From the NCBI GenBank assembly GCA_002269645.1, contig NIVC01004833.1, forward strand, positions 1 through 33,853: a stretch of DNA of 33,853 bases, written 5' to 3'. Position 1 is the first letter of the stretch. The number at the start of each line of letters is the position of its first letter. The position numbers were made by a program, and so were the translations under genes. Below the pieces are notes generated by a model. It did not search any database. It was not told where the DNA came from and saw only the letters and a list, made by a program, of their open reading frames with translations. Of this stretch, positions 4,849-20,468 are shown piece after piece. This stretch comes from Macrostomum lignano (Eukaryota).

Positions 4849-5680
4849 TTCAGTGAGCTCCCATCCCCTCCCTGATCCTTCAGTGAGCTCCCCCCATGAT
4901 CCTTCAGTGAGCTCCCCCCATGATCCTTCAGTGAGCTCCCTCCCTGATCCTTCAGTGAGCTCCCCCCATGATCCTTCAGTGAGCTCCCTCCCTGATCCTT
5001 CAGTGAGCTCCCTCCCTGATCCTTCAGTGAGCTCCCTCCCTGATCCTTCAGTGAGCTCCCTCCCTGATCCTTCAGTGAGCTCCCTCCCTGATCCTTCAGT
5101 GAGCTCCCTCCCTGATCCTTCAGTGAGCTCCCTCCCTGATCCTTCAGTGAGCTCCCTCCCTGATCCTTCAGTGAGCTCCCTCCCTGATCCTTCAGTGAGC
5201 TCTCTCCCTAAACAGTGAGCTGAGTCCCTGCTGATCCTTCAGTGAGCTCCCTCCCTGATCCTTCAGTGAGCTCCCCCCATGATCCTTCAGTGAGCTCCCT
5301 CCCTGATCCTTCTGTGAGCTCCCCCCATGATCCTTCAGTGAGCTCCCTCCCTGATCCTTCAGTGAGCTCCCTCCCTGATCCTTCAGTGAGCTCCCCCCAT
5401 GATCCTTCAGTGAGCTCCCTCCCTGATCCTTCAGTGAGCTCCCTCCCTGATCCTTCAGTGAGCTCCCTCCCTGATCCTTCAGTGAGCTCCCTCCCTGATC
5501 CTTCAGTGAGCTCCCTCCCTGATCCTTCAGTGAGCTCCCTCCCTGATCCTTCCGTGAGCTCTCTCCCTAAACAGTGAGCTGAGTCCCTGCTGATCCTTTA
5601 GTGAGCTCCCTCCCTAAACAGTGAGCTGAGTCCCTGATCCTTCAGTAAGCTCCCTTCCTGATCCTTCCGTGAGCTCCCAG
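4849..5680 (+). repeat. 24-bp minisatellite (GATCCTTCAGTGAGCTCCCTCCCT) with a roughly 360-bp block duplication
   Basis: Period 24 (DPSVSSLP shadow ORF). The interrupting variant CTAAACAGTGAGCTGAGTCCCTGCTG recurs near 5210 and 5570. Confidence 0.93.
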
Positions 5681-5735
5681 CCACTCCCTGAATTCCCGAT
5701 GGCAATGATGAGGCAGTGATGCAGCTGGAATAGTT

Positions 5736-5998
5736 TTAGTCAGCGGCTTCAACTGCTTTGGCGAGGCTTTCAACCATTGCAAACTGCTCGGCTAAGACTC
5801 GAGTACCTGAGCTGCTATCAGATTAAACTGCAACTGACTATTTCGAGGCTGGCGATGATTTATGCCAGCTTGAGCAGCACTGAGTGGCTTCTTCTTAAGC
5901 AGCTCCGATAAGGTTTGCTGCATCTCTCGATAAAAAAGCTTTGCCCACACAGCGTAATACTCGTAAATCAATTTTTGTTCAGAGTTCAGACGCTGCAT
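5736..5998 (-). other. Possible coding segment or exon of unknown product (MQRLNSEQKLIYEYYAVWAKLFYREMQQTLSELLKKK...)
   Basis: Non-repetitive, helical-looking Q/E/K/L-rich translation with an acceptor-like TTCTGTTCCTATGCAG| at 5993. No recognisable family. Confidence 0.25.
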
Positions 5999-6212
5999 AG
6001 GAACAGAACTTTTATTGTACTAGTGAGGTCACGCTCCCAAGCTAGGTTTAAGGTCTTCATCTGGGGCATCTGGGTTCTGCTGATTAAGCAGATGAAGCTG
6101 AAATACGAGTAGCTTGCCCCGTGTATCACAAAAAAATTAATAAATTGCCATCATGCTACTTATCTGCATTGGAGCGTAGTAGTAGAGATAATCAATTTGC
6201 TTTTCTCTAGAA

Positions 6213-7400
6213 CCTTCACTGGGTTCTCATTCCCTCTCTGATCCCTTACTGGGTTTTTATTCCCTCTCTGATCCCTTACTGGGTTTTTATTCCCTCTCTG
6301 ATCCCTTACTGGGTTTTTATTCCCTCCCTGATCCTCACTGGGTTCTCATTCCCTCCCTTGATCCTCACGGGGTTCTCATTCCCTCCTTTGATGCTCACTG
6401 GGTTCTCATTCCCTCCCTGATCCCTCACTGGATTCTCATTCCCTCCATGATCCCTCACTGGATTCTCATTCCCTCCCTCATCCCTCACTGGATTCTCATT
6501 CCCTCCCTTGATCCTCACTGGATTCTCATTCCCTCCCTGATCCCTCACTGGATTCTCATTCCCTCCCTCATCCCTCACTGGATTCTCATTCCCTCCCTCA
6601 TCCCTCACTGGATTCTCATTCCCTCCCTCACCCCTCACTGGATTCTCATTCCCTCCCTCATCCCTCACTGGGTTCTCATTCCCTCCCTCATCCCTCACTG
6701 GGTTCTCATTCCCTCCCTCATCCCTCACTGGGTTCTCATTCCCTCCCTCATCCCTCACTGGATTCTCATTCCCTCCCTCATCCCTCACTGGGTTTTCATT
6801 CCCTCCCTCATCCCTCACTGGGTTCTCATTCCCTCCTTCATCCCTCACTGGGTTCTCATTCCCTCCCTCATCCCTCACTGGGTTCTCATTCCCTCCCTCA
6901 TCCCTCACTGGATTCTCATTCCCTCCCTCATCCCTCACTGGGTTCTCATTCCCTCCCTCATCCCTCACTGGATTCTCATTCCCTCCCTCATCCCTCACTG
7001 GGTTTTCATTCCCTCCCTCATCCCTCACTGGGTTCTCATTCCCTCCTTCATCCCTCACTGGGTTCTCATTCCCTCCCTCATCCCTCACTGGGTTCTCATT
7101 CCCTCCCTCATCCCTCACTGGGTTCTCATTCCCTCCCTTGATCCTCACTGGATTCTCATTCCCTCCCTTGATCCTCACTGGATTCTCATTCCCTCCCTTG
7201 ATCCTCACTGGATTCTCATCCCCTCCCTGATCCCTCACTGGATTCTCATTCCCTCCCTTGATCCTCACTGGGTTCTCATTCCCTCCCTTGATCCTCACTG
7301 GATTCTCATCCCCTCCCTGATCCTCACTGGGCTCTCATTCCCTCCTTTGATCCTCACTGGGCTCTCATTCCCTCACTGATTCCTCACTGGGCTCTCATTC
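6213..7400 (+). repeat. 30-bp C/T-rich minisatellite (ATCCCTCACTGGRTTCTCATTCCCTCCCTC), about 40 copies
   Basis: Period 30 with 29-bp variants at the ends; produces the RDEGGNENPV and IPHWILIPSL shadow ORFs. Confidence 0.95.
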
Positions 7401-7448
7401 CTTCATTCATCCTTCGGTGTTCAGCCACCCTTATATCCTTTAGTATTC

Positions 7449-7715
7449 CCTTCACCTGACCATTGCCCTCACCTGACCATTGCCCTCATCTGACCATTGC
7501 CCTCACTTGACTATTGCCCTCACCTGACCATTGCCCTCACCTGACCATTGCCCTCACCTGACCATTGCCCTCATCTGACCATTGCCCTCACCTGACCATT
7601 GCCCTCACCTGACCATTGCCCTCATCTGACCATTGCCCTCACCTGACCATTGCCCTCACCTGACCATTGCCCTCACCTGACCATTGCCCTCACCTGACCA
7701 TTGCCCTCACCTGAC
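7449..7715 (+). repeat. 17-bp minisatellite (CCTCACCTGACCATTGC), about 15 copies, ending at a candidate acceptor 44 nt upstream of the PDP start codon
   Basis: Period 17; the last unit runs into CTGACTGATTTCAG| (AG at 7723-7724). Confidence 0.92.
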
Positions 7716-7768
7716 TGATTTCAGCGCCCCCGCACATTCTCCACTATCGCGTCCGCTGCCGCCTCGCC

Positions 7769-10700
7769 ATGACGATTCGGCGAGCGGCCGCTCGTCCCGC
7801 GTGGCTTCGCCGCTGGCTGCACGCGGCTGCTGGGCTGCGCCATGCGGAGGTCATCAGCGGCAACCAGCAGTTCCCCCTCATCAGCCCGCAGCAGGTGCGC
7901 CAGCTGCTGCGCCAGGGAGCCGAGCGGCACACGGCTGACGTGGCCGGCTGGCAGGTCTCCGTGCACTGCAACCAGGTGCCCTGCAACCGGCCCGTGGAGG
8001 ACAGGTGACGGCTGGTCTTGGTTTCACTTGAAATTTCTTTCAATTTGTGCGTCTCCTGACTCAACTGCCACTCGTGGGTCACCTGACTCAACTGCCACTC
8101 GTGGGTCACCTGACTCAACTGCCACTCGTGGGTCACCTGACTCAACTGCCACTCGTGGGTCACCTGACTCAACTGCCACTCGTGGGTCACCTGACTCAAC
8201 TGCCACTCGTGGGTCACCTGACTCAACTGCCACTCGTGGGTCACCTGACTCAAATGCCACTAGCGGGTCACCTGACTCAACTGCCACTCGTGGGTCACCT
8301 GACTCAACTGCCACTCGTGGGTCACCTGACTCAACTGCCACTCGTGGGTCACCTGACTCGAATGGCACTCGTGGGTCACCTGACTCGAATGCCACTCGTG
8401 GGTCACCTGACTCAACTGCCACTAGCGGGTCACCTGACTCAACTGCCACTAGCGGGTCACCTGACTCAAATGCCACTAGCGGGTCACCTGACTCGAATGC
8501 CACTCGTGGGTCACCTGACTCAACTGCCCCAATCTCCAGACTGGCCGTCAGCCGCCTGCTGATTGGGCCTCCCGTGCAGTCGCAGGACGGTCCGCTGCTT
8601 GTCGGCGTCTTCGACGGGCACGCAGGACCCGCGTGCGCGAACTCCGTGCACCTGCGCCTGCCCGACTACCTGGCCGTGGCCATGGCCGACCCGCTGCGCC
8701 TGCACGACATCAAGGTGGCCGGACAGGCCCTCAGTCTCAACATTGCCAGGCTGCCCCACGGCCCGGAACTCGAGGAGGAGCTCGGCCGGCTGCACGACCA
8801 GCAGGTGCTGCGCCTGTTGTCATAGCAACTTACTAGCAACGCTCTGTCGCTGTTCTTCATTTTTAACTACACCAGCCTGCTGGATTCTTCGGTCCCCACC
8901 GCAAATCCTGTGCTGGATTCACCGCTCCGCAAATCCTGTGCTGGATTCTCCGCTCCGCAAATCCTGTGCTGGATTCTCCGCTCCCTACCGCAAATCCTGT
9001 GCTGGATTCTCCGCTCCCTACCGCAAATCCTGTGCTGGATTCTCCGCTCCCTACCGCAAATCCTGTGCTGGATTCTCCGCTCCCTACCGCAAATCCTGTG
9101 CTGGATTCTCCGCTCCCTACCGCAAATCCTGTGCTGGATTCTCCGCTCCCTACCGCAAATCCTGTGCTGGATTCTCCGCTCCCTACCGCAAATCCTGTGC
9201 TGGATTCACCGCTCCGCAAATCCTGTGCTGGATTCTCCGCTCCCTACCGCAAATCCTGTGCTGGATTCTCCGCTCCCTACCGCCCCATCCTGTGCTGGAT
9301 TCTCCACTCCCTACCGCAAATCCTGTGCTGGATTCTCCGCTCCCTACCGCAAATCCTGTGCTGGATTCTCCACTCCCTACCGCCCCATCCTGTGCTGGAT
9401 TCTCCACTCCCTACCGCAAATCCTGTGCTGGATTCTCCGCTCCCTACCGCCCCATCCTGTGCTGGATTCTCCACTCCCTACCGCAAATCCTGTGCTGGAT
9501 TCTCCGCTCCCTACCGGCTCCTCGAATTCCACTCTCCCCTCTGCTTTCGCCCCTCCCCTCTTTAACCAGCCAGCCACCCGTACCGCAGCTGTCCGCCTTC
9601 ACCTCGGAGACGCTGTCCATGAGCGAGCCGGAGCCGCTCGGCCACCGCCTGCGGGAGGCCATGCAGCGCCTCGACACGGACATCGGCGAGGCTGCGCAGC
9701 CCCGGCCAGGCGCCGCTGGCCTCAACCGCGCGCTGCTCCGCGTGGCGCTGTCCGGCTGCGTGGGCACCGTGGCGCTGCTGGAGCCGCCCGACCGCCTCCA
9801 CGTGCTGCACGTTGGCGACTGCGCCGCCGTCCTCGGCCGCTGCCACGACCAGCTGTGGTACGCGCACAAGCTCACCGAAGAGCACCGAGCCGACAATCCC
9901 GCCGAGCTCGAGCGCCTCATGCGCTCCCATCCGGTCAGCGAGCGCGACTTCCTTGTCCGCTACGACCGCCTGCTCGGCGAGCTCATGCCGCTGCGCGCGT
10001 TCGGCGACATTCGCTACAAGTGGAGCGCCGACCTGCTGCGCACCGCCGGCCGCCTGCTGCAGCTGCCCGCCACCTACAACCCCGTGCCGCAGTACTACTA
10101 CACCCCGCCTTACCTCACCGCCGAGCCCGACTTCGCCACGCAGCAGGTGACCTACGCTCATGTGACCCCCTCCTCTAATGTGACCCCCTCCTCTAATGTG
10201 ACCCCCTCCGCTCATGTGACCCCCTCCTCTAATGTGACCCCCTCCTCTAATGTGAATCCCCCTCTAATGTGGTCCCCTCCGCTCATGTGACCCCCTCTAA
10301 TGTGGTCCCCTCCGCTCATGTGACCCCCTCTAATGTGACCCCCTCGGCTCATGTGACCCCTCCTCTAATGTGACCCCCTCCTCTAATGTGACCCCCTCCG
10401 CTCATGTGACCCCCTCCTCTAATGTGACACCCTCCTCTAATGTGAATCCCCCTCTAATGTGGTCCCCTCCGCTCATGTGACCCCCTCTAATGTGACCCCC
10501 TCCTCTAATGTGACCCCCTCCGCTCATGTGACCCCCTCCTCTAATGTGACACCCTCCTCTAATGTGAATCCCCCTCTAATGTGAATCCCCCTCTAATGTG
10601 GTCCCCTCCGCTCATGTGACCCCCTCTAATGTGACCCCCTCCTCTAATGTGACCCCCTCCGCTCATGTGACCCCCTCCTCTAATGTGACACCCTCCTCTA

Positions 10701-11326
10701 ATGTGAATCCCCCTCTAATGTGGTCCCCTCCGCTCATGTGACCCCCTCTAATGTGACCCCCTGCTCTAATGTGAACCCCTCTAATGTGACCCCCTCCGCT
10801 CATGTGACCCCCTCTAATGTGACCCCCTGCTCTAATGTGAATCCCTCCGCTCGTGTGACCCCCTCCTCTAAAACCCCTCCGCTCGTGACCCCTCCTCTAA
10901 TGTGAACCCCTCCGCTCATGTGACCCCCTCCACTATGTCCTCCACTCATGTGACCCATGTGTCTGCTGCTCCCCATCCTGGCAGATTACAGGCGACGACC
11001 GGTTCCTCATCCTGGCCTCCGACGGCCTGTGGGACCACCTGCCGCCCGAGGACGCTGTCGCCATTGTCGGAGCCGCCATCGACAGCGGCGCCTTCGGCAT
11101 CGGCGGAGGCGGCGGCAGCAGCGGCAGCGACGCGGAAGAAGTCACGGAGAGCGGGCGCAGCGGCGCCAACCTTGCCACGCTGCTGGTGCGGGCGGCGCTG
11201 GGCGGGCAGAAGCGGGGAGACTCGGAGCCCTCGGAGGCGATGATCACCCAGCTGCTGTCGGCGCCAGCCAACGTGGCCAGGTACTACAGGGACGACATCA
11301 CCGTGGCAGTGCTGCTGCTGCACTGA
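7769..11326 (+). CDS. PDP1: Mitochondrial pyruvate dehydrogenase phosphatase catalytic subunit-like PP2C; join(7769..8004,8540..8804,9589..10146,10985..11326), 466 aa
   Basis: All three introns are GT-AG with matching phases (2,0,0); exons total 1401 nt ending in TGA. Motifs: NRPVEDR, LVGVFDGHAG, QRLDTDI, LHVGDCAAVLG, EHRADNPAELERL, RLLGELMPLRAFGDIRYKW, YYTPPYLTAEP, DRFLILASDGLWD, YRDDITV. The Arg/Ala-rich, acid-free N-terminus resembles a mitochondrial presequence. PDP1 versus PDP2 orthology cannot be resolved. Confidence 0.92.
8055..8527 (+). repeat. 27-bp minisatellite (CCTGACTCAACTGCCACTCGTGGGTCA), about 17 copies, filling PDP intron 1
   Basis: Period 27; the last unit runs into the acceptor at 8538-8539. 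Confidence 0.95.
8878..9515 (+). repeat. 33-bp minisatellite (CTACCGCAAATCCTGTGCTGGATTCTCCGCTCC) with shorter variants, filling PDP intron 2
   Basis: Period 33 (DSPLPTANPVL shadow ORF); each unit has an AATCC...GGATT inverted pair. Confidence 0.94.
10147..10955 (+). repeat. Variable minisatellite of about 20 bp (ATGTGACCCCCTCCTCTA / ATGTGACCCCCTCCGCTC) filling PDP intron 3
   Basis: Starts at the GTGACC donor (10147) and continues to about 30 nt before the acceptor at 10984. Confidence 0.92.
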
Positions 11327-11423
11327 CGCAAGTTGTTTTCGTGCCATTAACCTGCGTATTGACAGAAACTGTTGTAAAGTGAGCATTCACATCCAAAGCT
11401 TTGTTTTCAATTCAATTGATTGC

Positions 11424-12266
11424 TCCGCTGGTCTCTACTGACAGTAGTTTCGGGTGAAAACAACAGCCTATTTACAGTCTCTGCTGGTCTCTACTGACAG
11501 TAGTTTCGGGTGAAAACAACAGCCTATTTACAGTCTCTGCTGGTCTCTACTGACAGTAGTTTCGGGTGAAAACAACAGCCTATTTACAGTCTCTGCTGGT
11601 CTCTACTGACAGTAGTTTCGGGTGAAAACAACAGCCTATTTACAGTCTCTGCTGGTCTCTACTGACAGTAGTTTCGGGTGAAAACAACAGCCTATTTACA
11701 GTCTCTGCTGGTCTCTACTGACAGTAGTTTCGGGTGAAAACAACAGCCTTTTTACAGTCTCTGCTGGTCTCTACTGACAGTAGTTTCGGGTGAAAACAAC
11801 AGCCTATTTACAGTCTCTGCTGGTCTCTACTGACAGTAGTTTCGGGTGAAAACAACAGCCTATTTACAGTCTCTGCTGGTCTCTACTGACAGTAGTTTCG
11901 GGTGAAAACAACAGCCTATTTACAGTCTCTGCTGGTCTCTACTGACAGTAGTTTCGGGTGAAAACAACAGCCTATTTACAGTCTCTGCTGGTCTCTACTG
12001 ACAGTAGTTTCGGGTGAAAACAACAGCCTTTTTACAGTCTCTGCTGGTCTCTACTGACAGTAGTTTCGGGTGAAAACAACAGCCTTTTTACAGTCTCTGC
12101 TGGTCTCTACTGACAGTAGTTTCGGGTGAGAACAACAGCCTTTTTACAGTCTCTGCTGGTCTCTACTGACAGTAGTTTCGGGTGAGAACAACAGCCTTTT
12201 TACAGTCTCTGCTGGTCTCTACTGACAGTAGTTTCGGGTGAAAACAACAGCCTATTTACAGTCTCT
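11424..12266 (+). repeat. 56-bp minisatellite, about 15 near-identical copies, just 3' of the PDP stop codon
   Basis: GTCTCTACTG recurs at 11431, 11487 and onward. Unit: CTCTGCTGGTCTCTACTGACAGTAGTTTCGGGTGAAAACAACAGCCTATTTACAGT. Confidence 0.96.
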
Positions 12267-12319
12267 CCAAGATTTCAATTCACACCAAAAAGGCAGGTTG
12301 GCGCCGGCTCTTCGAAACG

Positions 12320-12325
12320 AATAAA
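12320..12325 (+). terminator. Candidate polyadenylation signal (AATAAA) for the PDP gene
   Basis: First AATAAA I found after the PDP stop codon; it lies beyond the 56-bp array. Confidence 0.4.
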
Positions 12326-13451
12326 TAATCTGCTCGCTCTCCGTTGCCACCCCGGCGCTCTGGCAAGGATTTGCTAAGAAGGATTTCCCCCTTTGTGCTT
12401 CTCTGCTTTCCTGTAATTTTTTTTTCACGTGCTCGCTAATCTCCTTAGCTATTCGAGGCTGGAATTCTGTATCCGGCTGCCTTGAATTTTGTCTGCTTTT
12501 TAGTTGCTTTTAGAGCAGCGGAGGCACTCGGCTGATTGCCGCCCCCCGCAGAGGCCTCTGGGCCCGCACTCTGTCTGATAACTTTGCTTTATTAGCAACT
12601 TACCTAATTGTCCAACGCGGGGTCAGCTCTCTGTGTGCTCACGCTGACTCTCAGTTCTCTCATACTGCTGGAAGTAGCCTGTCCGCTATGTTCCAGTGCC
12701 AGCCGCCTGCTAAAGTACAGATAACATCTTCACAGCAGTCTGTAATGTGTTGCCTGCATTGCTCATGTGCGCTGCCTGTTTTATAACTGTAAGTCTGCTC
12801 TGTCCGCCTACCCGCCTGTTCGTCTCATTCATTTTGTCTGCCGGCATGAAATTAATAAATTAAAAAAAATGAAATATTAAAAATTCTTGTTTCTAGCTTG
12901 AAGATCCATATTTTAAATGCAATAAATGCTAATTTGAGCAATAAAATTGTCTTGACTGATTATTTTACTAAGAGAGAGTTCATAGCCCGAGGCAAGGGTC
13001 AATTAGAGAAATCTCTCTACCCATTAGTCTGCGGGGGCTTCCCATCAGCGTCAGTTCTATTTTTTTCTGTACAGCCGGGGTCGCACCGGTTTTGGCCTGT
13101 ATTGTTGCTATTCAATAGGTGCTGTGCGGCGGCACTGTGCTTTATGCTCACTCAGTTCCAAGTTGTGACGTCCAATGCAAAAATAGACACTTCAGGCACT
13201 CGGCTCGGTCGTGTGTGAGCGCTCTTAGATGGAGCTACGCTCGAACTGCTCGAACTGGTGTCTAAAATTAGATACTCGTCATGACTCGCAGTAAGATGAC
13301 TCTGCCCAGCTGGCTGGCAGGCCCCATCACCCGCGCCGAGTCTCACTCGGGTGCTGCTGACGCTGCAGTCGCCCTGCCGGCGAGGACAGGCGCAAACTCT
13401 GCGTTTCGTCGAATGACTGGGAGGGAAATTCAGGCAGCTCAACTGAAAACG

Positions 13452-13687
13452 CGTCATTTGGGGTTGGTTTGTGCCCGAAAATCGACCGGTGGCTGTCTTG
13501 CGATTCACGCCAATGAGGGCCAGGTCACAAGGCACAGAACACATGCCTTACGATTAGAAAGTCAAGAGCCGCCGTACACCCTGTGTGAGCGAGTGCATGG
13601 GTGCGTGCTTGCGTACAGTATTAGCGGCCCTTGTATGTGCTCAGGAGTCAGCGGAATGGGCAGAATTGCCCCAGCGTACTGGTTGCG
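13452..13687 (-). repeat. Dispersed repeat, copy 1 (homologous to 17614-17777, inverted)
   Basis: A block of about 55 bp (CAACCAGTACGCTGGGGCA.TTCTGCCCATTCCGCTGAC.CCTGAGCACATA) is nearly identical. Further shared blocks are TGACTTTCTAATC, GCATGTG, TCTGTGCCTT and GGCCCTCAT..GTGAAT. This copy has an extra insertion of about 60 bp. Confidence 0.8.
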
Positions 13688-14130
13688 AGCCGGTGTCGCT
13701 GAAGGCGTTGCGCCTTGGAGCCCGCAGCCCCTCCTGCAGCAACATGTTAATGACGCCGCTCTGCGTCAGTTGATGCTCGCGGCAACGGCTTAGTTAACAA
13801 GGCCTGAGTTCCATACAGACAAACTTTGCCTTCTCTTTTTAGTTGCACTGACACCGTTTGGACGGCAGCTTCTAGTGGGTGTGTGGGTGCAATTTGGTTC
13901 GTGGGTGCAAATTTCCATGTTGAACTCAAATTCAGCAAAATGTTTCGGGTTGTCAGAGATGACAGGATTTGACAACATTTTGACATTGTATTTTAGATTA
14001 ATAGCGGTAGAGAAGACGAAACGGATTAGGGGAATAGTACAAGTGAGATTGTGAGTCAAATCGCAGCCTCTGCAGCTGCATCTCGCAGGTGTTCAAGTTT
14101 ATTTTTAACTCTCCAAAACAAATATTTGAG

Positions 14131-15030
14131 TCAGCGACGTCTCCACGAGTCCTGCGCAGCTCCCGCCCACTGCTGCCGCCCGCCCATGGTGACGTTGAGC
14201 CTGTTGTCGTCCCCGACGATGTTGAGCAGGCCTCCGTTCTGGTTCACCCCGCCGCAGTCCAGCAGGTCGGCTTCGCTGCCGCCGGCCTCCCTCCCCAGTC
14301 TGGACCGCGGGCCGCACGCCTCGACCGTCTGCTCGGTTCGCAGGCTGGCCATCGAGTTCCATCGGCCGTTGGGCTGGTGCTCGGGCCGGCAGAGCCGCAG
14401 CTCCGGCTGGGCCGCCGACTCCGCGGTGTTGACAGTCGCCGGATTCGCCCCGGCGCTGCTTCTGGCCGGCGGAATCGGCATCTGCCGGAACTCCCAGAAC
14501 AGCGACTTCAGCTCCGCCAGGGCGAAACGCCGCGGCTTTGTCTCAACGCAGCTGAGCAGCTCCGCCTCCCTCTCCAGCAGCTCCTGCCGGGACTTCACTT
14601 TCCTCCGCTCCAGAAACTTCACGAGCTGCCGGTCCGTGTTGGCCGCCTTCAGCGAGTTTCTCCAGCGCTTCTTCGCCGGCTTTTCTTCGAGGGCCTCCTC
14701 CCAGCCGCTGCTGTAGGCGCTCTCGCCGCGGTTCCAAAGCTTGGCGTTGTCCAGCACCTTCAGGAGCTCGTTGTGGGAGAAGCGCTGCCTCCGAGACCCG
14801 GCTCGGTCGATGATGCTCTTGCGATGCTCGACCAGCTGCTGCACATCCGTGACCTGCTGCACCTCGATGAAGTAGTCCCGCAGGCACCTGCGCGTTTTTT
14901 GTCTCTTAAAAAAGGTCACGAGATCCTGGCTGACCGGCCGGCTGCCGATTTCCGCATAGCCGCTCTCGCCTGAGACCCGCGGCAGTTGCGGGTTTCTGAG
15001 GCGGACTGGAAAATCGCTCAGTTCGGACAT
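14131..15030 (-). CDS. G1: intronless 299-aa protein of unknown family; two tandem 81-aa repeats of a basic helical domain plus a C-terminal RHIM-like motif
   Basis: ATG to TGA, GC-rich and non-repetitive. TATAAAAA at 15102-15109 (-) and AATAAA at 14098-14103 (-). Shares motifs with G2-G4. Confidence 0.8.
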   Translation of the reverse strand: MSELSDFPVRLRNPQLPRVSGESGYAEIGSRPVSQDLVTFFKRQKTRRCLRDYFIEVQQVTDVQQLVEHRKSIIDRAGSRRQRFSHNELLKVLDNAKLWNRGESAYSSGWEEALEEKPAKKRWRNSLKAANTDRQLVKFLERRKVKSRQELLEREAELLSCVETKPRRFALAELKSLFWEFRQMPIPPARSSAGANPATVNTAESAAQPELRLCRPEHQPNGRWNSMASLRTEQTVEACGPRSRLGREAGGSEADLLDCGGVNQNGGLLNIVGDDNRLNVTMGGRQQWAGAAQDSWRRR

Positions 15031-15315
15031 GATCGCCGAGATGGTTCGCTGCTTGGCTACGTGGCGGTTCTGAGTCTTGGCTGGCTGGCTGCTTCGTCAT
15101 ATTTTTATATCTTGGGTTCATTCCGCATTATAGTGCCTCCCCCTAAAATATCTGTGACTAATAATACCCTCTAAGTGGGCTTTTGTTGTCACAATGTACA
15201 GTGCAGACTCGTGCACAATGCCCGGCATAATTTTGTATATTTAAAATAGAGCTGGCAGACAGATGCGCCTCCATAGTTTTGCCCAGAACCGCCGCTTCAT
15301 CCAAGCAGCTCAGAG
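15031..15315. promoter_or_regulatory. 285-bp divergent intergenic region and probable bidirectional promoter between G1 and G2
   Basis: Head-to-head ATGs. TATA-like elements on both strands (15102-15109 -, about 15236-15248 +). An inverted homologous leader block lies at 15048-15072 (-) and 15284-15309 (+). Confidence 0.6.
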
Positions 15316-16224
15316 ATGAGTGACGTGAGTAGGGCGATTCAGTCCTGGCAGGGCGACGCGCGGGTGAAGAAGTTCATCATCAAGTCCTGCCCGAAGGGCG
15401 ACAGCCTCGGCCAGTTCCTCCGGGATGAGAATCTGCGAAGTCTCAACAAGAAAATTGCCAAACAGAAAAATGCGAAATTCGCTATTAAAGATGTTGACGC
15501 GGCTGTGAACCATCTCAGGGACAGCTGGGCTGCCAAGATGTCGCAAGCCGCACGAGCGGAGCCGGGCTACGATAGCCTCGCCGAATCCGGCGGCCGAGCG
15601 GAGTCGGGCTACGATAGCCTCGCCGAATCCCCCTGCCGCAGCTCAGCCTCTGAAGCCAGCGCCACCCAGACTTGCAGAAGCGTCTCCTCTCTGGCCAACC
15701 GGCCGCTGCCGCCAGTGCCATCAGAGCGGCGGGACTCCGACCGCGGCTACCAGACTCAGTCAGGCAGCCTGTCTGATGAGGACTCGCAGGCTGCCGGAGC
15801 TGCAGCAGCCCTAGCTGCGACCGCGGAGCCGAGCGTCCAGCCTCCGCGGCCGCAGCCGAGACGCTCTGCAGTCAGGGTGAGTCACAATGATGCCGCGAGC
15901 AGCTCCTGCGGTGCCGCCGAGGCTGCCGAGCAGCTGGTGGCGGACTCTGAGCAGGACTCGGCTGGCCGCACCTGGTCGGAGGCCGCGGCAGTCAGAGCTC
16001 CGCAGGCCCGGCCGCGGCTCAGCTTGGCCCGTCGTTCCAGCGAGACTCGTGGCGGCGATGACGCGTCCAGCCTCTCGGGACCCGCCGCCACCGCTGCGGC
16101 CCCGCCATCGAGCGGTCGGACGCCGGTCTGCCAGAACGGCTTCTTCAACATCCACGGCGGCAAAAACGAGATCGATGTCGACCTGGAGGCTGTGAAAATG
16201 TTGATGGACTTCAAATCGAAATGA
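15316..16224 (+). CDS. G2: intronless 302-aa protein of unknown family (helical N-domain, duplicated E[SP]GYDS motif, RPLPPVP, C-terminal RHIM-like motif)
   Basis: ATG to TGATGA with AATAAA at 16283 and 16292. The N-terminus aligns with G3 (WQGD..VKKF); the C-terminal motif aligns with G1. Confidence 0.85.
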   Translation: MSDVSRAIQSWQGDARVKKFIIKSCPKGDSLGQFLRDENLRSLNKKIAKQKNAKFAIKDVDAAVNHLRDSWAAKMSQAARAEPGYDSLAESGGRAESGYDSLAESPCRSSASEASATQTCRSVSSLANRPLPPVPSERRDSDRGYQTQSGSLSDEDSQAAGAAAALAATAEPSVQPPRPQPRRSAVRVSHNDAASSSCGAAEAAEQLVADSEQDSAGRTWSEAAAVRAPQARPRLSLARRSSETRGGDDASSLSGPAATAAAPPSSGRTPVCQNGFFNIHGGKNEIDVDLEAVKMLMDFKSK

Positions 16225-16784
16225 TGACCTTCTGATTCATATTTTGCACTGCTCAATTGGTCATTTTTTCTCTGTAAAATGAAATAAAAACAATAAATCT
16301 TTTCGCGCGATATCTTTTCAAAAATATATTCGAATAACCTCATTGAAATAGTTGATCATCGTTTTTTTATTTCTGAGATCCGAATTGGATTGTAAAGTTT
16401 CTGTTGTCCTTGCATTTCGTTAACCTTGCCGTGCTGGCGCTGGCCTCGATGCAGTAAGAGTTTGCAAAATAGTCAAGGCTATTTTTAGAAACCATTGTTG
16501 GGAATTTCAAACAGAAGAGCTAATAGTGTCTAATAGAGGCACAACCCTTTTGCCCAACCCAACCCAACCCTTCTGACCAACCCCAAATGTTTATTCAGGC
16601 ACCTGACGTCAGGGCCTATTAGGTAGGTGCGAATGTCAAGGTACTTTTGTAATTTTTTTTTATTCCTGACAATGTTTATTCCGTGTTATTGGAACTGCGG
16701 CCTACGGTTCTGTGCTTATTAAATGATATGACAACCCGCAGCCAGCGGCTACCTCGTATTAAATTTTTTTGCTCCTGATACACT

Positions 16785-16791
16785 TATAAAT
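16785..16791 (+). promoter_or_regulatory. TATA-box-like element upstream of G3
   Basis: TATAAAT 41 nt upstream of the G3 ATG. Confidence 0.45.
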
Positions 16792-16825
16792 GCGCTGCAG
16801 ACTTTCCAGTACTTAGCGCTCGGAC

Positions 16826-17560
16826 ATGCCAAGCCAGGTGGTCCAGGAGATTCGCTGCTGGCAGGGCGACCCAGCCGTCAAAAAGTTCGAGTCCGCCTGC
16901 TCGAAGTCGACCAGCCTGCAGGCGTTCTTCAGCGAGCGCAAGGATCAGCGACTATTGAAGAAGTTCCACGATCAGAAGCCGCAGAAGTTCGAGCGCAACC
17001 AGCTGCTAGATGCCCTGCAGCACCTCCGGAACTGCCTGAGTCAGCGGCAACAGCGCGAGAACGCCACCGGAAGCGCCGCCGGAAGCGCCGCCAGAAGCGC
17101 CGCCGGAAGCGCCGCCGGAAGCGCCGCCGGAAGCGCCGCCGGAAGCGCCGCCGGAAGCGCCGCCGGAAGCGCCATCGGAAGCGTCGAAACCGGCTACTGC
17201 AGCGTGAGCACCAGCTCAAGTCTTCCCTTGGACGCAGCTGCCGACCCATCGCTCGGTGGGCCCGCGGCCTCCGTTCTCAGCCCGGTGGATCCGCAGCCGG
17301 CCGAGCCTGTCTACGACGAGCTGTACCCGCGCCGGCGGCTCCCTGCGGCACCAGCAGCTGTTGAAGCGCCGAAGCCGCGGTCTCGCGCCTCCCTGGCGAC
17401 GCCTGGCGCCAATCTGGTGGGCTGCGCCTCGCCAACTCCGCCGGTGCCGGCGCCGCGAGCCTCGAGTGACGCGCGCTGGCGGCAGAGCAGCGGCATCAAT
17501 ATTTCTATAACTTGTCCTGTCCAGCTGCAGACTGAGTGTTATCAAGGACGACTGAACTAA
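16826..17560 (+). CDS. G3: intronless 244-aa paralog of G2 with a (GSAA)n linker
   Basis: ATG to TAA. The N-domain aligns with G2; contains ETGYCS, EPVYDELY and C-terminal RQSSGINISI. Confidence 0.83.
   Translation: MPSQVVQEIRCWQGDPAVKKFESACSKSTSLQAFFSERKDQRLLKKFHDQKPQKFERNQLLDALQHLRNCLSQRQQRENATGSAAGSAARSAAGSAAGSAAGSAAGSAAGSAAGSAIGSVETGYCSVSTSSSLPLDAAADPSLGGPAASVLSPVDPQPAEPVYDELYPRRRLPAAPAAVEAPKPRSRASLATPGANLVGCASPTPPVPAPRASSDARWRQSSGINISITCPVQLQTECYQGRLN
17069..17182 (+). repeat. 12-bp coding tandem repeat (GGAAGCGCCGCC; GSAA about x9) within G3
   Basis: In-frame repeat between the N-domain and the ETGYCS motif. Confidence 0.9.
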
Positions 17561-17613
17561 GGAGGAAGAGACACTTAGAGGAAAATAGTAGTATTTGCAG
17601 CAGGACAGTCCCA

Positions 17614-17777
17614 CAACCAGTACGCTGGGGCAGTTCTGCCCATTCCGCTGACCCCTGAGCACATAGAAGTCCTGACTTTCTAATCATCAAGCATGTGCGC
17701 TCGTCTGTGCCTTTGGGGGGGGGGTTGGCCCTCATGGTTGTGAATTGCGCGAAAACCATACACAAAGCCCCAAGTGA
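17614..17777 (+). repeat. Dispersed repeat, copy 2, starting about 50 nt after the G3 stop codon
   Basis: Homologous to 13452-13687 in inverted orientation (see copy 1). Confidence 0.8.
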
Positions 17778-18236
17778 ACGTGGCCAGGGTGATGCGAGGG
17801 TCAGACGCCAAAATGATTTACAAGGAGTGAATATTTCGCAGCCCGAATTCCAGTGGAATTTATTTATTCTTAATCTTCTACTTAAGCTGCTCTTAGCTAT
17901 CATATCCCTGATTTTTAAGCCAAATTATTAGAGTCAAATTCATCTTATTGACAGCCTGTCACCTCACGGTTCGTGTAAATCAATTGTTCAAGTATAGCAG
18001 ATGTTGAATTGCCATGCAGTTTCATGCGATCTTGCCTGTCCCGTTTGCAGATCTTTTCAGTAGTTTTTGCAGTTCATTTTTTTCAATTTAAGCGTAGTTT
18101 TAATAAGGCACTTAGTAAGCCGCCCTTACTAGTCAGTGTCTAATTATAGACCTATTGTACATTTAGTAATTTGCACGAGCGTACAGCCTAAAAATGCCGA
18201 GCGCTCTCCCTTACAGCCGCACCGACAGCCATCGCG

Positions 18237-19064
18237 ATGAGCTCAAATGCGCTCTTTCTGATCGACATCGTCCGCGACTCGGGCGGCAGCCGGGAGGCCG
18301 GGAATTTCGTCATCAAGAACTTGCCGAAGAACCTCACGGCGAAAGACTTCCTGGACAAGAACTACAGCAGGCGGCTGTCTCGTCAGTTCGAGGGCATCAA
18401 GAAACAGCCGTGCTCGCAGCGGGAGTTCCAGCAGCTCCTCGGCAAAATGAGGCGGCTCAGCCAGGCCTCAGTGAGCGGCGGCGAGCGAGACTCCGCCTAC
18501 GACAGCTCGACAATTTCATCCCGCGCCTCCAGTGCCAACCAGCTGGTGGCGGCAAAGGCGGCGGAGGCGGCGGAGGCGAAGGCGGCGGAGGCGGCCAAGG
18601 CGGAGGCGGCCAAGGCGGAGGCAGCCAAGGCGGAGGCAGCCAAGGCGGAGGCGGCCAAGGCGGAGGCAGCCAAGGCGGAGGCGGCCAAGGCGGAGGCGGC
18701 CAAGGCGGAGGCGGCCAAGGCGGAGGCGGCCAAGGCGGAGGCGGCCAAAGGCAACTGGGAAGCCACGCGGGTGGTGCAGCCGGCGCAGCGGCTCGGAGCT
18801 CCGCCGCCGATTCTGACGCCGGGCTCGGAGAGGCCCGGAGGCGAGCCGCAGCGGTTGGCTCAGCCGCGGCTGCCCACGGTGCCACCGCAGGTGGCAGATC
18901 GGCAGCAGCCGCCGCCTCCGCCGCCGCCGCCATCCGCACCGGCACCTCAGCCGCAGCCGCAGCCGCAGCCGCAGCCGCAAGCGATCTTCAGGCCAGGCAG
19001 AGTCAGGCAGAGCGGTGCCATCAACGTCGTGGGCCACAGGACCAGCATCGCGGTGCGCGACTAA
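18237..19064 (+). CDS. G4: intronless 275-aa member of the same family with an (AEAAK)11 helical linker and a poly-Pro/PQ tract
   Basis: ATG to TAA with AATAAA at 19170. FVIKNLPK..TAKDFL aligns with G2 FIIKSCPK..SLGQFL; contains DSAYDS and C-terminal VRQSGAINVVGHRTSIAV. Confidence 0.8.
   Translation: MSSNALFLIDIVRDSGGSREAGNFVIKNLPKNLTAKDFLDKNYSRRLSRQFEGIKKQPCSQREFQQLLGKMRRLSQASVSGGERDSAYDSSTISSRASSANQLVAAKAAEAAEAKAAEAAKAEAAKAEAAKAEAAKAEAAKAEAAKAEAAKAEAAKAEAAKAEAAKAEAAKGNWEATRVVQPAQRLGAPPPILTPGSERPGGEPQRLAQPRLPTVPPQVADRQQPPPPPPPPSAPAPQPQPQPQPQPQAIFRPGRVRQSGAINVVGHRTSIAVRD
18585..18749 (+). repeat. 15-bp coding tandem repeat (GCGGAGGCRGCCAAG; AEAAK x11) within G4
   Basis: Eleven in-frame units counted directly. 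Confidence 0.92.
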
Positions 19065-19509
19065 GCGGAGATTTAAGGCCGGTGAACTGCGCTGTACATT
19101 AACTTTTCTGAATGCCAAACTGACATTAGCCTACTGACTGACCCTGTGTACATTATCCAGCATGCGAATAATAAATTTATGATCCGTTCGCTCACAGTAT
19201 GTAAACTTCTTTTCTGTTGCAAACAATAGCTCTTGGTCCCGCCTTGCCGTTACTTGAGGAGAGCATCAAAGCAGATGGGGCTGCTACAGTGCAGTGGCAG
19301 CGCTAACGAGCTGCTCCGCTCAAGCTCAAAAACGGGAATCACCAAAGCCTCAGATTTTTAAAAAAGTATCGCTTCGCACAAAGCACACCTGTCCTCCGCG
19401 TGCCTTTGTTCGCGCCAAGCTCCTGGAAACGTTGCGTTCAGACCCTGCCTGCCTCCTTGCCTGCTGCTCTCTTCACTGATAAACACGGCACCGATCTCGT
19501 TAGCTCAGA

Positions 19510-19727
19510 CTGCCTTATGCTCTGCCTTCTGCTCTGCCCTCTGCTCTGCCTTCTGCTCTGCCTTCTGCTCTGCCTTCTGCTCTGCCCTCTGCTCTGCCTT
19601 CTGCTCTGCCCTCTGCTCTGCCTTCTGCTCTGCCTTCTGCTCTGCCTTCTGCTCTGCCTTCTGCTCTGCCTTCTGCTCTGCCTTCTGCTCTGCCTTCTGC
19701 TCTGCCCTCTGCTCTGCCTTCTGCTCT
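19510..19727 (+). repeat. 12-bp minisatellite (CTGCCTTCTGCT), about 18 copies
   Basis: Direct periodicity; gives the LCLL shadow ORF. Confidence 0.93.
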
Positions 19728-20468
19728 CTCCTCCTCCCTTACCTTCTTGAGACTTCTTGACCCCCCCCACAGCCTCAGATCTCAGGTCTCAGCAGCCCCA
19801 GCTCCCCCATCTCAGCAGCTGCCCCATCCCGCAAAATGTGAAAGGCCTCGGCAGACCAAAGCAAGCAGTGGTGGGAAAATTCTCCCAACATGGGAGGCTG
19901 ACCGGACGCTGCCGAGAAGCTGTCTCCACTGTTTTATCGCGAGTTCGAGCGGCGGCAGGCCGATCAGAATAAATTACTTATCCAAGCACCGAAGCTCCGC
20001 AGCTGCCGACTGTTTATTCAGAATTTATCAGCCCCGACCGGCCGCTGCCGCTCCGCCGATCAAAGCGGAGCTCGGTTCGATTTTGCACTTTTAGCTGCGA
20101 AACAAAAAGATTGGAGAAGGTGGATGAACTGAGCAATACAGAGAAGAGGTTTGAGCAGCAATGAGCCGCGCTGCACGAACCGAGTTATGAAAAACTGGCA
20201 CTTCTCACCGCCCTTCTCTCCCAGCGGCCTCTGCGCCGCTTTCTTCGCCTTAACAGAGTTGGGGAGGAGCGCGGGCCGAGGAGCGTCCCCATTCAGTCCG
20301 GGAAATATTAGATTTTGCAACCCCCCCCCCCAACTGCAGCTCCCGCCAGGGCTGGGTGCTGGGCGCTCGTGTCATTTGCTTGATAATGGGGGGGGTCCAC
20401 CTGCACTGCAGTGCGGCTCCCTGCGTGCGGGACTGGCTGGGTGCGAGCAGGGAGTGGGAGCGGCCAAG

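What the first reader, a model, noticed from the sequence alone, without database searches (positions are those of the whole stretch)
14131..19064. Cluster of four intronless, highly diverged genes with a shared modular architecture: candidate undescribed signalling-adaptor system
Seen: G1(-), G2, G3 and G4(+) are single-exon ORFs of 244-302 aa packed into 5 kb with no non-coding satellites, unlike the rest of the window. Overall identity is very low, yet the same parts recur in a similar order: a basic helical domain of about 60-70 aa, a [DE][ST][GA]YxS motif, a Pro-rich low-complexity linker and a short conserved C-terminal beta-type motif. Known: a small folded domain, a disordered linker and a terminal amyloid motif is the layout of RHIM-type (RIPK1/RIPK3/ZBP1/TRIF, insect Imd/PGRP cRHIM) and fungal HET-s-type signalling proteins. 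Compact, fast-diverging tandem families are also typical of immune or stress loci. Inference: a lineage-specific family of inducible, short-lived adaptors that polymerise through the C-terminal motif. I recognise no known family.
Basis: partly seen in the sequence, partly recalled or inferred. Interest (0 to 1): 0.85.

Follow-up and report, generated by a model that had tools for sequence, protein, structure and literature searches.

The report
Flatworm-only four-gene modular protein family
Four neighbouring intronless genes of the flatworm Macrostomum lignano form a real, fast-evolving protein family with one shared domain-and-motif layout and no detectable relatives elsewhere, but no test run here shows that they are amyloid-type (RHIM-like) immune adaptors.

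Summary
The window is contig NIVC01004833.1 of the Macrostomum lignano assembly. G1 (14131-15030, -), G2 (15316-16224, +), G3 (16826-17560, +) and G4 (18237-19064, +) are intact single-exon ORFs. The same four genes lie in the same order at a second, diverged locus.

They share a collinear layout beyond chance:
- a basic N-terminal domain (AlphaFold2: five helices, pLDDT 85);
- an E-S-[GA]-Y-x-S motif;
- an Ala/Ser/Pro-rich repeat linker;
- a C-terminal motif, Q-[NS]-G-x-hydrophobic-N-[IV]-x-G followed by hydrophobic-x-V.

Two parts are weak: G1 keeps only part of the N-domain, and G3's C-motif is degenerate.

Pooled dN/dS between the two loci is 0.53 (p=0.001). The GenBank gene models are transcript-derived.

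No relative appeared in Pfam, PDB, Foldseek, an exhaustive HMMER search of 1.84 billion proteins, or viral and metagenome contigs.

The RHIM/amyloid reading is not supported. The defining tetrad is absent, Pfam RHIM does not match, and similarity to verified RIPK1 and RIPK3 RHIMs is at chance level.

Best reading: a lineage-restricted family of mostly disordered, motif-bearing scaffold proteins. Biological role and any inducibility are untested. Interest is moderate to low.

The parts
14131..15030 (-). G1 coding sequence, 299 aa, single exon. It is the most divergent member: an extra ESGY motif ahead of a partial N-domain, then a second helical stretch.
   Evidence: ORF. Annotated in GenBank as a 299-aa hypothetical protein on this contig. 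The copy at the second locus is 93% identical.
15316..16224 (+). G2 coding sequence, 302 aa, single exon.
   Evidence: ORF. Matches M. lignano hypothetical proteins Mlig017204g1 (83% identity) and Mlig010841g2 (92% identity).
16826..17560 (+). G3 coding sequence, 244 aa, single exon. It contains an in-frame (AAGS)n repeat at 17062-17183.
   Evidence: ORF. The second-locus copy is 89% identical, dN/dS 0.27. A partial model, Mlig010168g2, exists.
18237..19064 (+). G4 coding sequence, 275 aa, single exon. It contains in-frame (KAEAA)n and (PQ)n repeats. GenBank instead uses the overlapping alternative frame 18194-19102.
   Evidence: ORF. The N-domain HMM match beats all 3000 shuffles. dN/dS is 0.33. 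The alternative-frame ATG at 18194 is deleted at the second locus, and that frame is not open there.
15316..15555 (+). G2 N-terminal basic domain of five helices (aa 1-80).
   Evidence: AlphaFold2 pLDDT 84.8, pTM 0.68, helices at 3-9, 15-24, 31-34, 37-49 and 57-79. pI 10.1.
16826..17059 (+). G3 N-terminal domain.
   Evidence: BLASTP against G2, E=1e-10.
18237..18500 (+). G4 N-terminal domain.
   Evidence: BLASTP against G2, E=1e-3. HMM match beats all 3000 shuffles.
14785..14937 (-). G1 aa 32-82, a partial N-domain corresponding to profile positions 27-77.
   Evidence: HMM score 3.1 bits, 22/3000 shuffles as good. hhalign E=0.08. Weak.
14950..14967 (-). G1 motif ESGYAE.
14707..14724 (-). G1 motif ESAYSS.
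15559..15618 (+). G2 motifs EPGYDS and ESGYDS, duplicated by a 42-nt tandem repeat (15553-15636) that is absent at the second locus.
17186..17203 (+). G3 motif ETGYCS.
18489..18506 (+). G4 motif DSAYDS.
14467..14487 (-). G1 RQMPIPP, of the class I SH3-ligand type.
15700..15720 (+). G2 RPLPPVP, of the class I SH3-ligand type.
17333..17353 (+). G3 RRLPAAP.
18867..18884 (+). G4 RLPTVP.
14185..14247 (-). G1 C-terminal motif VNQNGGLLNIVGDDNRLNVTM.
   Evidence: Leave-one-out HMM, 2/3000 shuffles as good. AlphaFold2 draws it as a hairpin at low confidence.
16126..16185 (+). G2 C-terminal motif VCQNGFFNIHGGKNEIDVDL.
   Evidence: 0/3000 shuffles as good.
17477..17533 (+). G3 degenerate C-terminal motif WRQSSGINISITCPVQLQT.
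   Evidence: 195/3000 shuffles as good, best match at the right position. 11-mer core against G4: 178-385/5000.
19002..19061 (+). G4 C-terminal motif VRQSGAINVVGHRTSIAVRD.
   Evidence: 0/3000 shuffles as good.
15031..15315 (.). Divergent G1/G2 intergenic region with a TATA-like box for each gene: 15104-15109 on the - strand, and 15236-15248 on the + strand.
   Evidence: Sequence. About 97% identical to the second locus over columns 74-285 of the alignment. Promoter function is inferred.
16604..16611 (.). Perfect CRE palindrome TGACGTCA upstream of G3, conserved at the second locus. A TATAAA lies at 16785.
   Evidence: Function is inferred.

Best explanation
G1-G4 are a tandem, lineage-restricted paralogous family of Macrostomum lignano. 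So far it is seen only in this species.

What the proteins look like. They are mostly disordered, basic and non-secreted, and all share one modular plan:
(1) a small folded, basic N-terminal domain of five helices and a new sequence family;
(2) a Ser/Tyr-containing acidic motif, E-S-[GA]-Y-x-S, probably a phosphorylation-dependent docking or turnover site;
(3) one R-x-[LM]-P-x-x-P motif of the class I SH3-ligand type;
(4) an Ala/Ser/Pro repeat linker that expands and contracts in frame;
(5) a C-terminal strand-turn-strand motif, hydrophobic-N-[IV]-x-G then three residues then x-hydrophobic-x-V. It is the only hydrophobic island in the disordered half.

Most likely mechanism. They act as scaffold or adaptor proteins. 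The N-domain binds a target. The linear motifs recruit kinase, SH3 or E3-ligase partners. The shared C-motif mediates association with a common partner or among family members.

Shown: the genes, their paralogy, the collinear motifs, the fold prediction, weak purifying selection, and the absence of relatives.

Inferred: every functional step.
For: Real genes.
- The same four ORFs lie in the same order at the diverged second locus L001. All coding indels there are in frame, apart from one frame shift in the G1 copy.
- Pooled dN/dS is 0.53, Fisher p=0.001.
- The GenBank models come from a transcript-based annotation pipeline.
- Each gene has a TATA-like box. G1, G2 and G4 have AATAAA signals downstream.

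Paralogy and layout.

Folded N-domain: pLDDT 84.8 from only three sequences.

Disorder and composition.

No signal peptide or transmembrane segment is evident in the sequences.

No relatives:
- Pfam.
- PDB sequences.
- Foldseek against PDB and BFVD.
- Word-indexed searches of 5.8 billion proteins.
- Exhaustive HMMER search of 1.84 billion representatives.
- Viral and metagenome contigs.
Against: - No expression pattern, interaction or phenotype data were found. The gene IDs are absent from the supplementary files that are held as text for five M. lignano papers; a sixth paper had none held.
- Selection is only weakly purifying, and G2 alone is near neutral at 0.79.
- The motif-bearing modules are not measurably more constrained than the linkers: N 0.46, linker 0.56, C 0.68.
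- Short motifs such as RxxPxxP are common in Pro-rich sequence, and all motifs were defined post hoc.
- Full-length G1 is predicted at low confidence, pLDDT 43.
- The databases probably lack other Macrostomum species, so 'species-restricted' may only reflect sampling.
Confidence: 0.4

Rival explanations
1. The C-terminal motif is a RHIM, cRHIM or HET-s-type amyloid motif, and the proteins polymerise through it as inducible, short-lived immune or stress signalling adaptors.
For: - The architecture is analogous: a helical domain, a disordered linker, and a terminal motif of about 20 residues shared by several proteins.
- The motif reads as strand, G-x-x-N turn, strand, with a hydrophobic-N-hydrophobic core. 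AlphaFold2 draws a hairpin.
- G1 NIVGDDNRLNV resembles RIPK3 VQVGDNNYLTM, 95/5000 shuffles as good.
- E-S-G-Y-x-S has the S-x-x-x-S spacing of the beta-TrCP degron D-S-G-hydrophobic-x-S (my own knowledge of that motif).
- The genes are intronless and carry TATA-like boxes.
Against: - The RHIM tetrad (V/I)-Q-(V/I/L/C)-G and the cRHIM pattern VxxG are absent from all four proteins.
- No Pfam hit, RHIM and HET-s families included, at E<=10.
- 15 of 16 comparisons with verified RIPK1 and RIPK3 RHIMs are at chance level, and the remaining one does not survive multiple testing.
- The hairpin has pLDDT of about 42.
- No NLR, kinase-RHIM or death-fold partner lies nearby.
- G3's motif is degenerate.
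- There are no data on induction or half-life.
Confidence: 0.1
2. Fast-evolving reproduction-related orphan proteins, for example testis or sperm proteins. The shared motifs would serve germline-specific roles rather than signalling.
For: - About 48% of M. lignano germline-enriched genes have no homologue outside the species, and flatworm-specific families with a disordered part and one ordered domain are documented, e.g. Mlig-sperm1 (PMC5816591).
- dN/dS is high at 0.53, and the low-complexity linkers are repeat-driven.
Against: - The gene IDs do not appear in the held supplementary lists of neoblast- or germline-enriched genes or of reproduction-related genes. Those files may be truncated.
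- There is no similarity to the Mlig-sperm1 description, which includes a beta sheet plus helices and is conserved in planarians.
Confidence: 0.2
3. Nuclear regulators. The basic helical N-domain binds nucleic acid or chromatin, and the disordered tail carries regulatory phospho-motifs.
For: - The N-domains have pI 9.7-10.4 and a net charge of +6 to +12.
- G1 contains KKRWR and RRKVK clusters that look like a bipartite nuclear localisation signal (sequence).
- A weak, non-significant sequence match to the Nab2 N-terminal helical domain, E=1.1.
Against: No significant sequence or fold match to any DNA- or RNA-binding domain. The NLS reading is by eye only.
Confidence: 0.15
4. Not functional proteins at all: chance ORFs in GC-rich DNA, recently born or decaying genes, or cargo of a transposon or endogenous virus.
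For: - GC-rich sequence here carries long ORFs in several frames.
- G2's dN/dS is 0.79.
- No relatives were found anywhere.
- The genes are intronless and tightly packed.
Against: - Paralogues are similar at protein level, 39% aa identity with synonymous sites saturated, dS about 1.3.
- Collinear motifs exceed chance.
- Repeat indels between the two loci are in frame.
- Pooled dN/dS is significantly below 1.
- The gene models are transcript-derived.
- The N-domain fold is confidently predicted.
- No transposase, reverse transcriptase or viral hits.
- The cluster is syntenic with PP2C at both loci.
- No terminal repeats bound it.
Confidence: 0.05

Closest known systems
RHIM and cRHIM adaptors (RIPK1, RIPK3, TRIF, ZBP1; insect Imd, PGRP-LC/LE, Pirk)
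   Same: A short motif of about 20 residues, rich in beta-formers, is shared by several otherwise dissimilar proteins and sits in a disordered region. A G-x-x-N turn followed by hydrophobic-x-hydrophobic is seen in G1 and G2, as in RIPK1 IQIGAYNYMEI and RIPK3 VQVGDNNYLTM (sequences verified).
   Different: The defining tetrad (V/I)-Q-(V/I/L/C)-G is absent; here the residues are N-[IV]-x-G. There is no Pfam RHIM hit, and similarity is not above chance. No kinase, death domain, TIR, Z-alpha or PGRP domain is attached. Amyloid formation is untested.
Fungal HET-s/HELLP and bacterial BASS amyloid-signalling pairs
   Same: An N-terminal helical domain with a C-terminal amyloid-type motif, encoded in gene clusters (PMC13506858).
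   Different: Those systems pair an effector with an adjacent NLR that carries the same motif at its N-terminus. No NLR lies in this window. The N-domain here is 80 aa, basic and without a membrane-insertion helix. There are no Pfam HET-s or sigma hits.
beta-TrCP phosphodegron substrates (D-S-G-hydrophobic-x-S; IkB-alpha, beta-catenin, Emi1)
   Same: An acidic residue, Ser/Thr, a small residue, an aromatic residue, any residue, then Ser, with the same i/i+4 serine spacing (my own knowledge of the degron; motif positions).
   Different: None of the sites fits the strict pattern DSG.{2,3}[ST]. They have E for D, or A for G, and one site ends in E. No evidence of phosphorylation or of rapid turnover.
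Adaptors bearing class I SH3 ligands ([RK]xxPxxP)
   Same: Each protein has one such site. G2's RPLPPVP is close to the optimal Src-SH3 ligand RPLPPLP (my own knowledge).
   Different: The motif class is very loose and common in Pro-rich sequence, and binding is untested. In G4 the conserved copy is RLPTVP, with the Arg one residue closer.
SAM-type five-helix oligomerisation domains (e.g. LEAFY N-terminal domain, PDB 4UDE)
   Same: About 75 residues, four short helices plus a long C-terminal helix. This was the best structural superposition, TM 0.52-0.53 and rmsd 3.6 A over 70 columns.
   Different: Foldseek E=4.3 and probability 0.21, so not significant. No Pfam SAM hit.
Flatworm-specific orphan families in M. 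lignano (e.g. Mlig-sperm1, PMC5816591)
   Same: Lineage-restricted, no Pfam domain, one ordered domain plus a large disordered fraction, and duplicated loci in the Mlig_3_7 assembly.
   Different: Mlig-sperm1 is conserved in planarians and has a beta sheet plus helices. The family here has no detectable relatives outside M. lignano, and its expression is unknown.

Membership tests
RHIM (Pfam PF12721) | Core tetrad (V/I)-Q-(V/I/L/C)-G within an 18-20-residue amyloidogenic segment (PMC13506858) | tested here: not met
   The residues ending at the motif's Gly are NIVG (G1), NIHG (G2) and NVVG (G4). G3 has NISI at that position, and its nearest approach is VQLQ.
RHIM (Pfam PF12721) | Match to the family profile, or to bona fide RHIM sequences | tested here: not met
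   hmmscan of the four C-termini against Pfam-A at E<=10 gave 0 families. A profile of the four motifs against PDB gave 0 hits. RIPK1 and RIPK3 11- and 16-mers against G1-G4 were at chance level, except RIPK3 vs G1 at 95/5000.
RHIM (Pfam PF12721) | Forms cross-beta amyloid and hetero-oligomerises with other motif carriers | not testable with these tools
   Needs ThT, EM, SDD-AGE or multimer modelling. Single-chain AlphaFold2 gives only a hairpin at pLDDT about 42.
cRHIM (insect Imd/PGRP type) | VxxG core (PMC13506858) | tested here: not met
   No V lies three residues before the motif's Gly; that position is N in G1, G2 and G4. The pattern is too loose for this to carry much weight.
HET-s / sigma / BASS amyloid signalling | Profile match (Pfam HET-s_218-289, Ses_B), and the same motif on an adjacent NLR | tested here: not met
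   No Pfam hit. No NACHT or NB-ARC ORF in the window; the neighbours are PP2C and a GPCR.
beta-TrCP degron (pattern DSG.{2,3}[ST], recalled from ELM entry DEG_SCF_TRCP1_1) | Strict sequence pattern | tested here: not met
   The sites are ESGYAE, ESAYSS, EPGYDS, ESGYDS, ETGYCS and DSAYDS. None has D-S-G. The pattern is quoted from memory.
beta-TrCP degron | Phosphorylation-dependent ubiquitylation and a short half-life | not testable with these tools
   Requires experiment.
Class I SH3 ligand | [RK]xxPxxP | tested here: met
   RQMPIPP (G1), RPLPPVP (G2), RRLPAAP (G3), RQQPPPP (G4). This is a pattern match only; binding was not tested.
SAM domain | Profile or fold match | tested here: inconclusive
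   No Pfam hit. Best Foldseek match is 4ude_B, TM 0.52, E=4.3.
Death-fold domains (DD, CARD, PYD, DED) | Six-helix bundle, with a profile or fold match | tested here: not met
   Five helices are predicted. No death-fold hit in Pfam or in the Foldseek PDB search.

The most novel reading that the evidence does not exclude
G1-G4 are the first flatworm example of a motif-templated signalling module. On this reading the shared C-terminal hydrophobic-N-[IV]-x-G ... hydrophobic-x-V element is a new, non-RHIM class of functional-amyloid or beta-zipper assembly motif. It would let the four paralogues co-polymerise, with the E-S-G-Y-x-S site acting as a phosphodegron that limits the signal.
Probability: 0.07. 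Interest if true: 0.75.

Novelty: new variant of a known kind. Interest (0 to 1): 0.3.

Why it matters
If the family proves to be a functional scaffold set, it would add a new small helical fold and a new conserved C-terminal interaction motif to the list of protein modules. It would also give the transgenic and RNAi-tractable model M. lignano a compact four-gene locus for studying how lineage-specific, mostly disordered proteins are built from short linear motifs, and how they diverge after tandem and whole-genome duplication.

If the C-motif really templates polymerisation, amyloid-type signalling would extend to Platyhelminthes with a motif unrelated to RHIM.

As things stand it is one of many uncharacterised orphan families in a genome rich in them.

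The practical gains are two. The GenBank annotation of G4 and of the PP2C fusion model appears to be wrong. The family is now defined precisely enough to search for in other Macrostomum genomes.

Tried and rejected
1. Pfam on the full proteins and on the C-termini found nothing above cut-off. The weak hits (Mitofilin, Shadoo and others) fall on the low-complexity repeats.
2. Three word-indexed searches of 5.8 billion proteins returned only M. lignano copies.
3. The exhaustive HMMER profile search of 1.84 billion representatives with the N-domain returned only the G3 fragment of the duplicate contig.
4. PDB sequence searches with the N-domain and the C-motif found nothing significant.
5. Foldseek of the N-domain model against PDB and BFVD gave no hit with E<1.
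6. AlphaFold2 on full-length G1 was low confidence and not usable for fold search.
7. The RHIM hypothesis was tested three ways and rejected as a membership claim.
8. A transposon or viral origin was rejected: no bounding repeats, no viral relatives, and synteny at both loci.
9. The frameshifts in the 99.4%-identical contig L002 were first considered as pseudogenisation. They are 28 indels, most of them 1 bp within short single-base runs, plus 1 substitution, which points to consensus errors.
10. The alternative-frame ORF 18194-19102 used by GenBank was rejected as the G4 product.
11. Expression data: the gene IDs were not found in full text or in the held supplements of five papers; a sixth had none held.
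12. An ITAM reading of G2's doubled YDSL was rejected. The duplication is a recent 42-nt repeat absent from the second locus.
13. Metagenome contigs held no relatives.

Full report
**Origin of the window.** The window is the whole 33,853-bp contig NIVC01004833.1 of the Macrostomum lignano assembly GCA_002269645.1, a free-living flatworm.

Two other contigs of that assembly carry the same locus.
- L002 (NIVC01003958.1) is 99.4% identical over 14.4 kb. Within the 5.2 kb of the finding it differs by 28 indels, most of them 1 bp within short single-base runs, and a single substitution. I read it as the same locus with consensus errors, so the frameshifts it shows in all four genes are artefacts.
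- L001 (NIVC01000020.1) is a truly diverged second copy, with synonymous divergence of about 0.06. It holds the same four genes in the same order and orientation next to the same PP2C phosphatase gene.

**The observation.** G1 (14131-15030, -), G2 (15316-16224, +), G3 (16826-17560, +) and G4 (18237-19064, +) are complete ATG-to-stop ORFs of 299, 302, 244 and 275 aa. The flanks are dominated by minisatellites. The 5-kb interval has only three repeat arrays, and all are in-frame coding repeats: (AAGS)n in G3, and (KAEAA)n and (PQ)n in G4.

Long ORFs occur in several frames of this GC-rich DNA, so an ORF alone proves little. Several results show that these four frames are the coding ones.
- The N-termini of G2 and G3 are 39-40% identical as protein (E=1e-10) although synonymous sites are saturated, dS about 1.3.
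- The repeat-number differences between the window and L001 are all multiples of three.
- Pooled dN/dS over 1082 codons is 0.53, Fisher p=0.001. By gene: G1 0.62, G2 0.79, G3 0.27, G4 0.33.
- GenBank gene models exist for G1 on this contig, G1' and G2' on L001, and G2 and part of G3 on L002.
- That annotation was built only from RNA-seq-derived transcripts (PMC5730564).
- Each gene has a TATA-like box 40-100 nt upstream of its ATG. G1, G2 and G4 have AATAAA shortly after the stop codon.

**Shared architecture.**
- N-domain. G4 against an HMM of G2+G3 beats all 3000 shuffles. G1 residues 32-82 match only profile positions 27-77, with 22/3000 shuffles as good, and hhalign is not significant. G1 therefore has at best a partial domain.
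- [DE][ST][GA]Y motif. It occurs in every protein, with a per-protein chance of 0.4-1.4%.
The per-protein chance is about 2%.
- C-terminal motif. Leave-one-out HMMs recover it in G1 (2/3000), G2 (0/3000) and G4 (0/3000). G3's copy, GINISITCPVQLQT, needs a one-residue gap, lacks the Gly and is only marginal at 195/3000, though found at the right place.
- The order is the same in all four: ES[GA]Y, then RxLPxxP, then the C-motif.
- The N-domains are basic (pI about 10). The linkers are Ala/Ser/Pro-rich with 9-16% hydrophobic residues. The C-motif is a hydrophobic island.

The motifs were defined after inspection, so these probabilities are optimistic. The joint pattern is still well beyond chance.

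**Structure.** AlphaFold2 on the G2 N-domain, using only the three-sequence alignment, gives a confident bundle of five helices: pLDDT 84.8, pTM 0.68, helices at 3-9, 15-24, 31-34, 37-49 and 57-79.

Foldseek finds nothing significant in PDB or BFVD. The best superposition is the SAM-like LEAFY oligomerisation domain, TM 0.52, E=4.3.

Full-length G1 is predicted at pLDDT 43. Its C-motif is drawn as a beta-hairpin (270-274 and 277-281), but at a confidence too low to use.

**Relatives.** None were found outside M. lignano.
- Pfam.
- PDB sequences.
- Three word-indexed searches of 5.8 billion proteins.
- An exhaustive HMMER profile search of 1.84 billion cluster representatives.
- Viral and metagenome contig scans.

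These collections include the well-sequenced flatworms through NCBI and UniRef, but probably not other Macrostomum species. 'Restricted to M. lignano' therefore means 'no relative detectable outside the genus'. It does not mean the family is proven species-specific. The saturated divergence between G2, G3 and G4 argues that the family is much older than the species' recent genome duplication.

**The RHIM/amyloid interpretation.** A 2026 review defines RHIMs as 18-20-residue segments with a core tetrad (V/I)-Q-(V/I/L/C)-G, and cRHIMs by VxxG (PMC13506858). Neither is present: the flatworm cores are NIVG, NIHG, NVVG and NISI. No Pfam family, RHIM and HET-s included, matches the C-termini at E<=10.

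I checked my recollection of the human RIPK3 and RIPK1 RHIM sequences against PDB chains 7DAC and 9HR6 and scored them against all four proteins. Only RIPK3 VQVGDNNYLTM against G1 NIVGDDNRLNV stands out, at 95/5000. That is one of 16 tests and does not survive multiple testing.

What remains is an analogy of layout: a helical domain, a disordered linker, and a shared strand-turn-strand motif with a hydrophobic-N-hydrophobic core. This is compatible with beta-zipper or amyloid-like association and equally with ordinary partner binding. Membership in RHIM, cRHIM or HET-s is therefore rejected. 'Works like' remains possible but is unsupported; I put it at about 0.1.

**'Inducible and short-lived'.** E-S-G-Y-x-S has the serine spacing and the central aromatic residue of the beta-TrCP degron D-S-G-hydrophobic-x-S (my own knowledge), but no site fits the strict pattern. 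Intronless genes with TATA boxes, and a conserved CRE palindrome (TGACGTCA at 16604, also in L001), are typical of rapidly induced genes. This is suggestive only.

I found no expression data. The gene IDs do not occur in the searchable full texts or in the held supplementary files of five M. lignano papers; a sixth had none held. The neighbours are a PP2C phosphatase and an intronless rhodopsin-type GPCR, not immune genes.

**Best explanation and rivals.** I commit to a lineage-restricted tandem family of mostly disordered scaffold or adaptor proteins.
- That the genes are real protein-coding paralogues: confidence about 0.9.
- That they act as motif-based scaffolds whose C-motif mediates association: about 0.4, all of it inferred.

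The rivals, with confidences:
- Fast-evolving germline proteins, 0.2. Orphans are strongly over-represented among M. lignano germline genes (PMC5816591).
- Basic nuclear regulators, 0.15.
- The RHIM-like amyloid model, 0.1.
- Non-functional ORFs or mobile-element cargo, 0.05.

Module-wise dN/dS (N 0.46, linker 0.56, C 0.68) does not single out the motifs. With only about 130 substitutions in total, the comparison has little power.

**Novelty and interest.** At the level of sequence and fold family this is unassigned. In GenBank the proteins exist only as 'hypothetical protein', and G4 is not annotated in its correct frame. As a kind of thing it is familiar: a tandem family of taxonomically restricted, largely disordered, motif-bearing proteins. 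M. lignano has very many orphan genes. I therefore rate it a new variant of a known kind, with moderate to low interest (0.3). The score would rise sharply only if polymerisation through the C-motif, or stress or immune induction, were shown.

Noticed in passing
window 7727-19102 (+); alternative-frame ORF 18194-19102: The GenBank model on this contig is a 745-aa 'PP2C' protein spanning 7727-19102. It ends exactly at the stop of an alternative-frame ORF that overlaps G4 and translates to Gly/Gln/Arg-rich junk. It looks like a chimeric read-through or mis-spliced transcript on which the longest ORF was chosen. G2, G3 and G4 are therefore not annotated on this contig. The alternative ATG at 18194 is deleted at the second locus. 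A good 3' splice acceptor (ctctcccttacag, ending about 18216) lies between the two ATGs and could be a spliced-leader acceptor.
   Followed up: partly
L002 (NIVC01003958.1), aligned to window 5388-19753: This near-identical duplicate contig differs from the window by 28 indels (most of them 1 bp within short single-base runs) and 1 substitution in 5.2 kb. These break all four genes and produced truncated or partial GenBank proteins (Mlig010841g2, Mlig010168g2). They are probably uncorrected long-read errors rather than pseudogenes.
   Followed up: yes
window 7727-11300 (+) and the surrounding 268-12266: The PP2C phosphatase gene upstream has introns, and the whole left half of the contig is packed with minisatellite arrays of 10- to 56-bp units, up to 1.2 kb long. 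Some of them are shared with the second locus.
   Followed up: no
window 27338-28819 (-): An intronless 493-aa ORF encodes a rhodopsin-family 7TM receptor (Pfam 7tm_1 E=3.5e-8; Srw-type E=1e-8).
   Followed up: partly
window 32218-32865 (-): A 215-aa ORF has a sequence reminiscent of the C-lobe of a protein kinase, but no Pfam hit. It may be one exon of a larger gene.
   Followed up: no
window 15553-15636: A 42-nt tandem duplication doubles the motif in G2, giving EPGYDSLAES and ESGYDSLAES. The two YDSL are 10 residues apart, an ITAM-like spacing. The duplication is absent from the second locus, where the single copy reads ESGYYS.
   Followed up: partly
window 17062-17183, 18548-18748, 18905-18979: Coding micro- and minisatellites (AAGS, KAEAA, PQ) differ in copy number between the two loci, always in frame: 16 codons fewer at the second locus in G3, 31 codons more and 5 fewer in G4. 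The linkers therefore evolve mainly by repeat slippage.
   Followed up: yes
window 13630-13685 and 17614-17669: An inverted repeat of 56 nt at 95% identity, extending to about 160 nt at 86%, lies downstream of G1 and downstream of G3, in the same position relative to each gene. It could be a remnant of the inverted duplication that made G1, or a small dispersed element. Part of it is present downstream of G3' at the second locus.
   Followed up: partly
window 16604-16611; L001 aligned position: A perfect CRE/ATF palindrome, TGACGTCA, lies about 220 nt upstream of the G3 start and is conserved with its flanks at the second locus. G3's TATAAA at 16785 is not conserved there.
   Followed up: no
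window 15031-15315: The divergent G1/G2 intergenic region is about 97% identical between the two loci (6 substitutions in about 212 nt). That is less diverged than synonymous sites (about 6%), which hints at a constrained bidirectional promoter, but the difference is not statistically clear. Both 5' leaders contain CCAAGCAGC.
   Followed up: no
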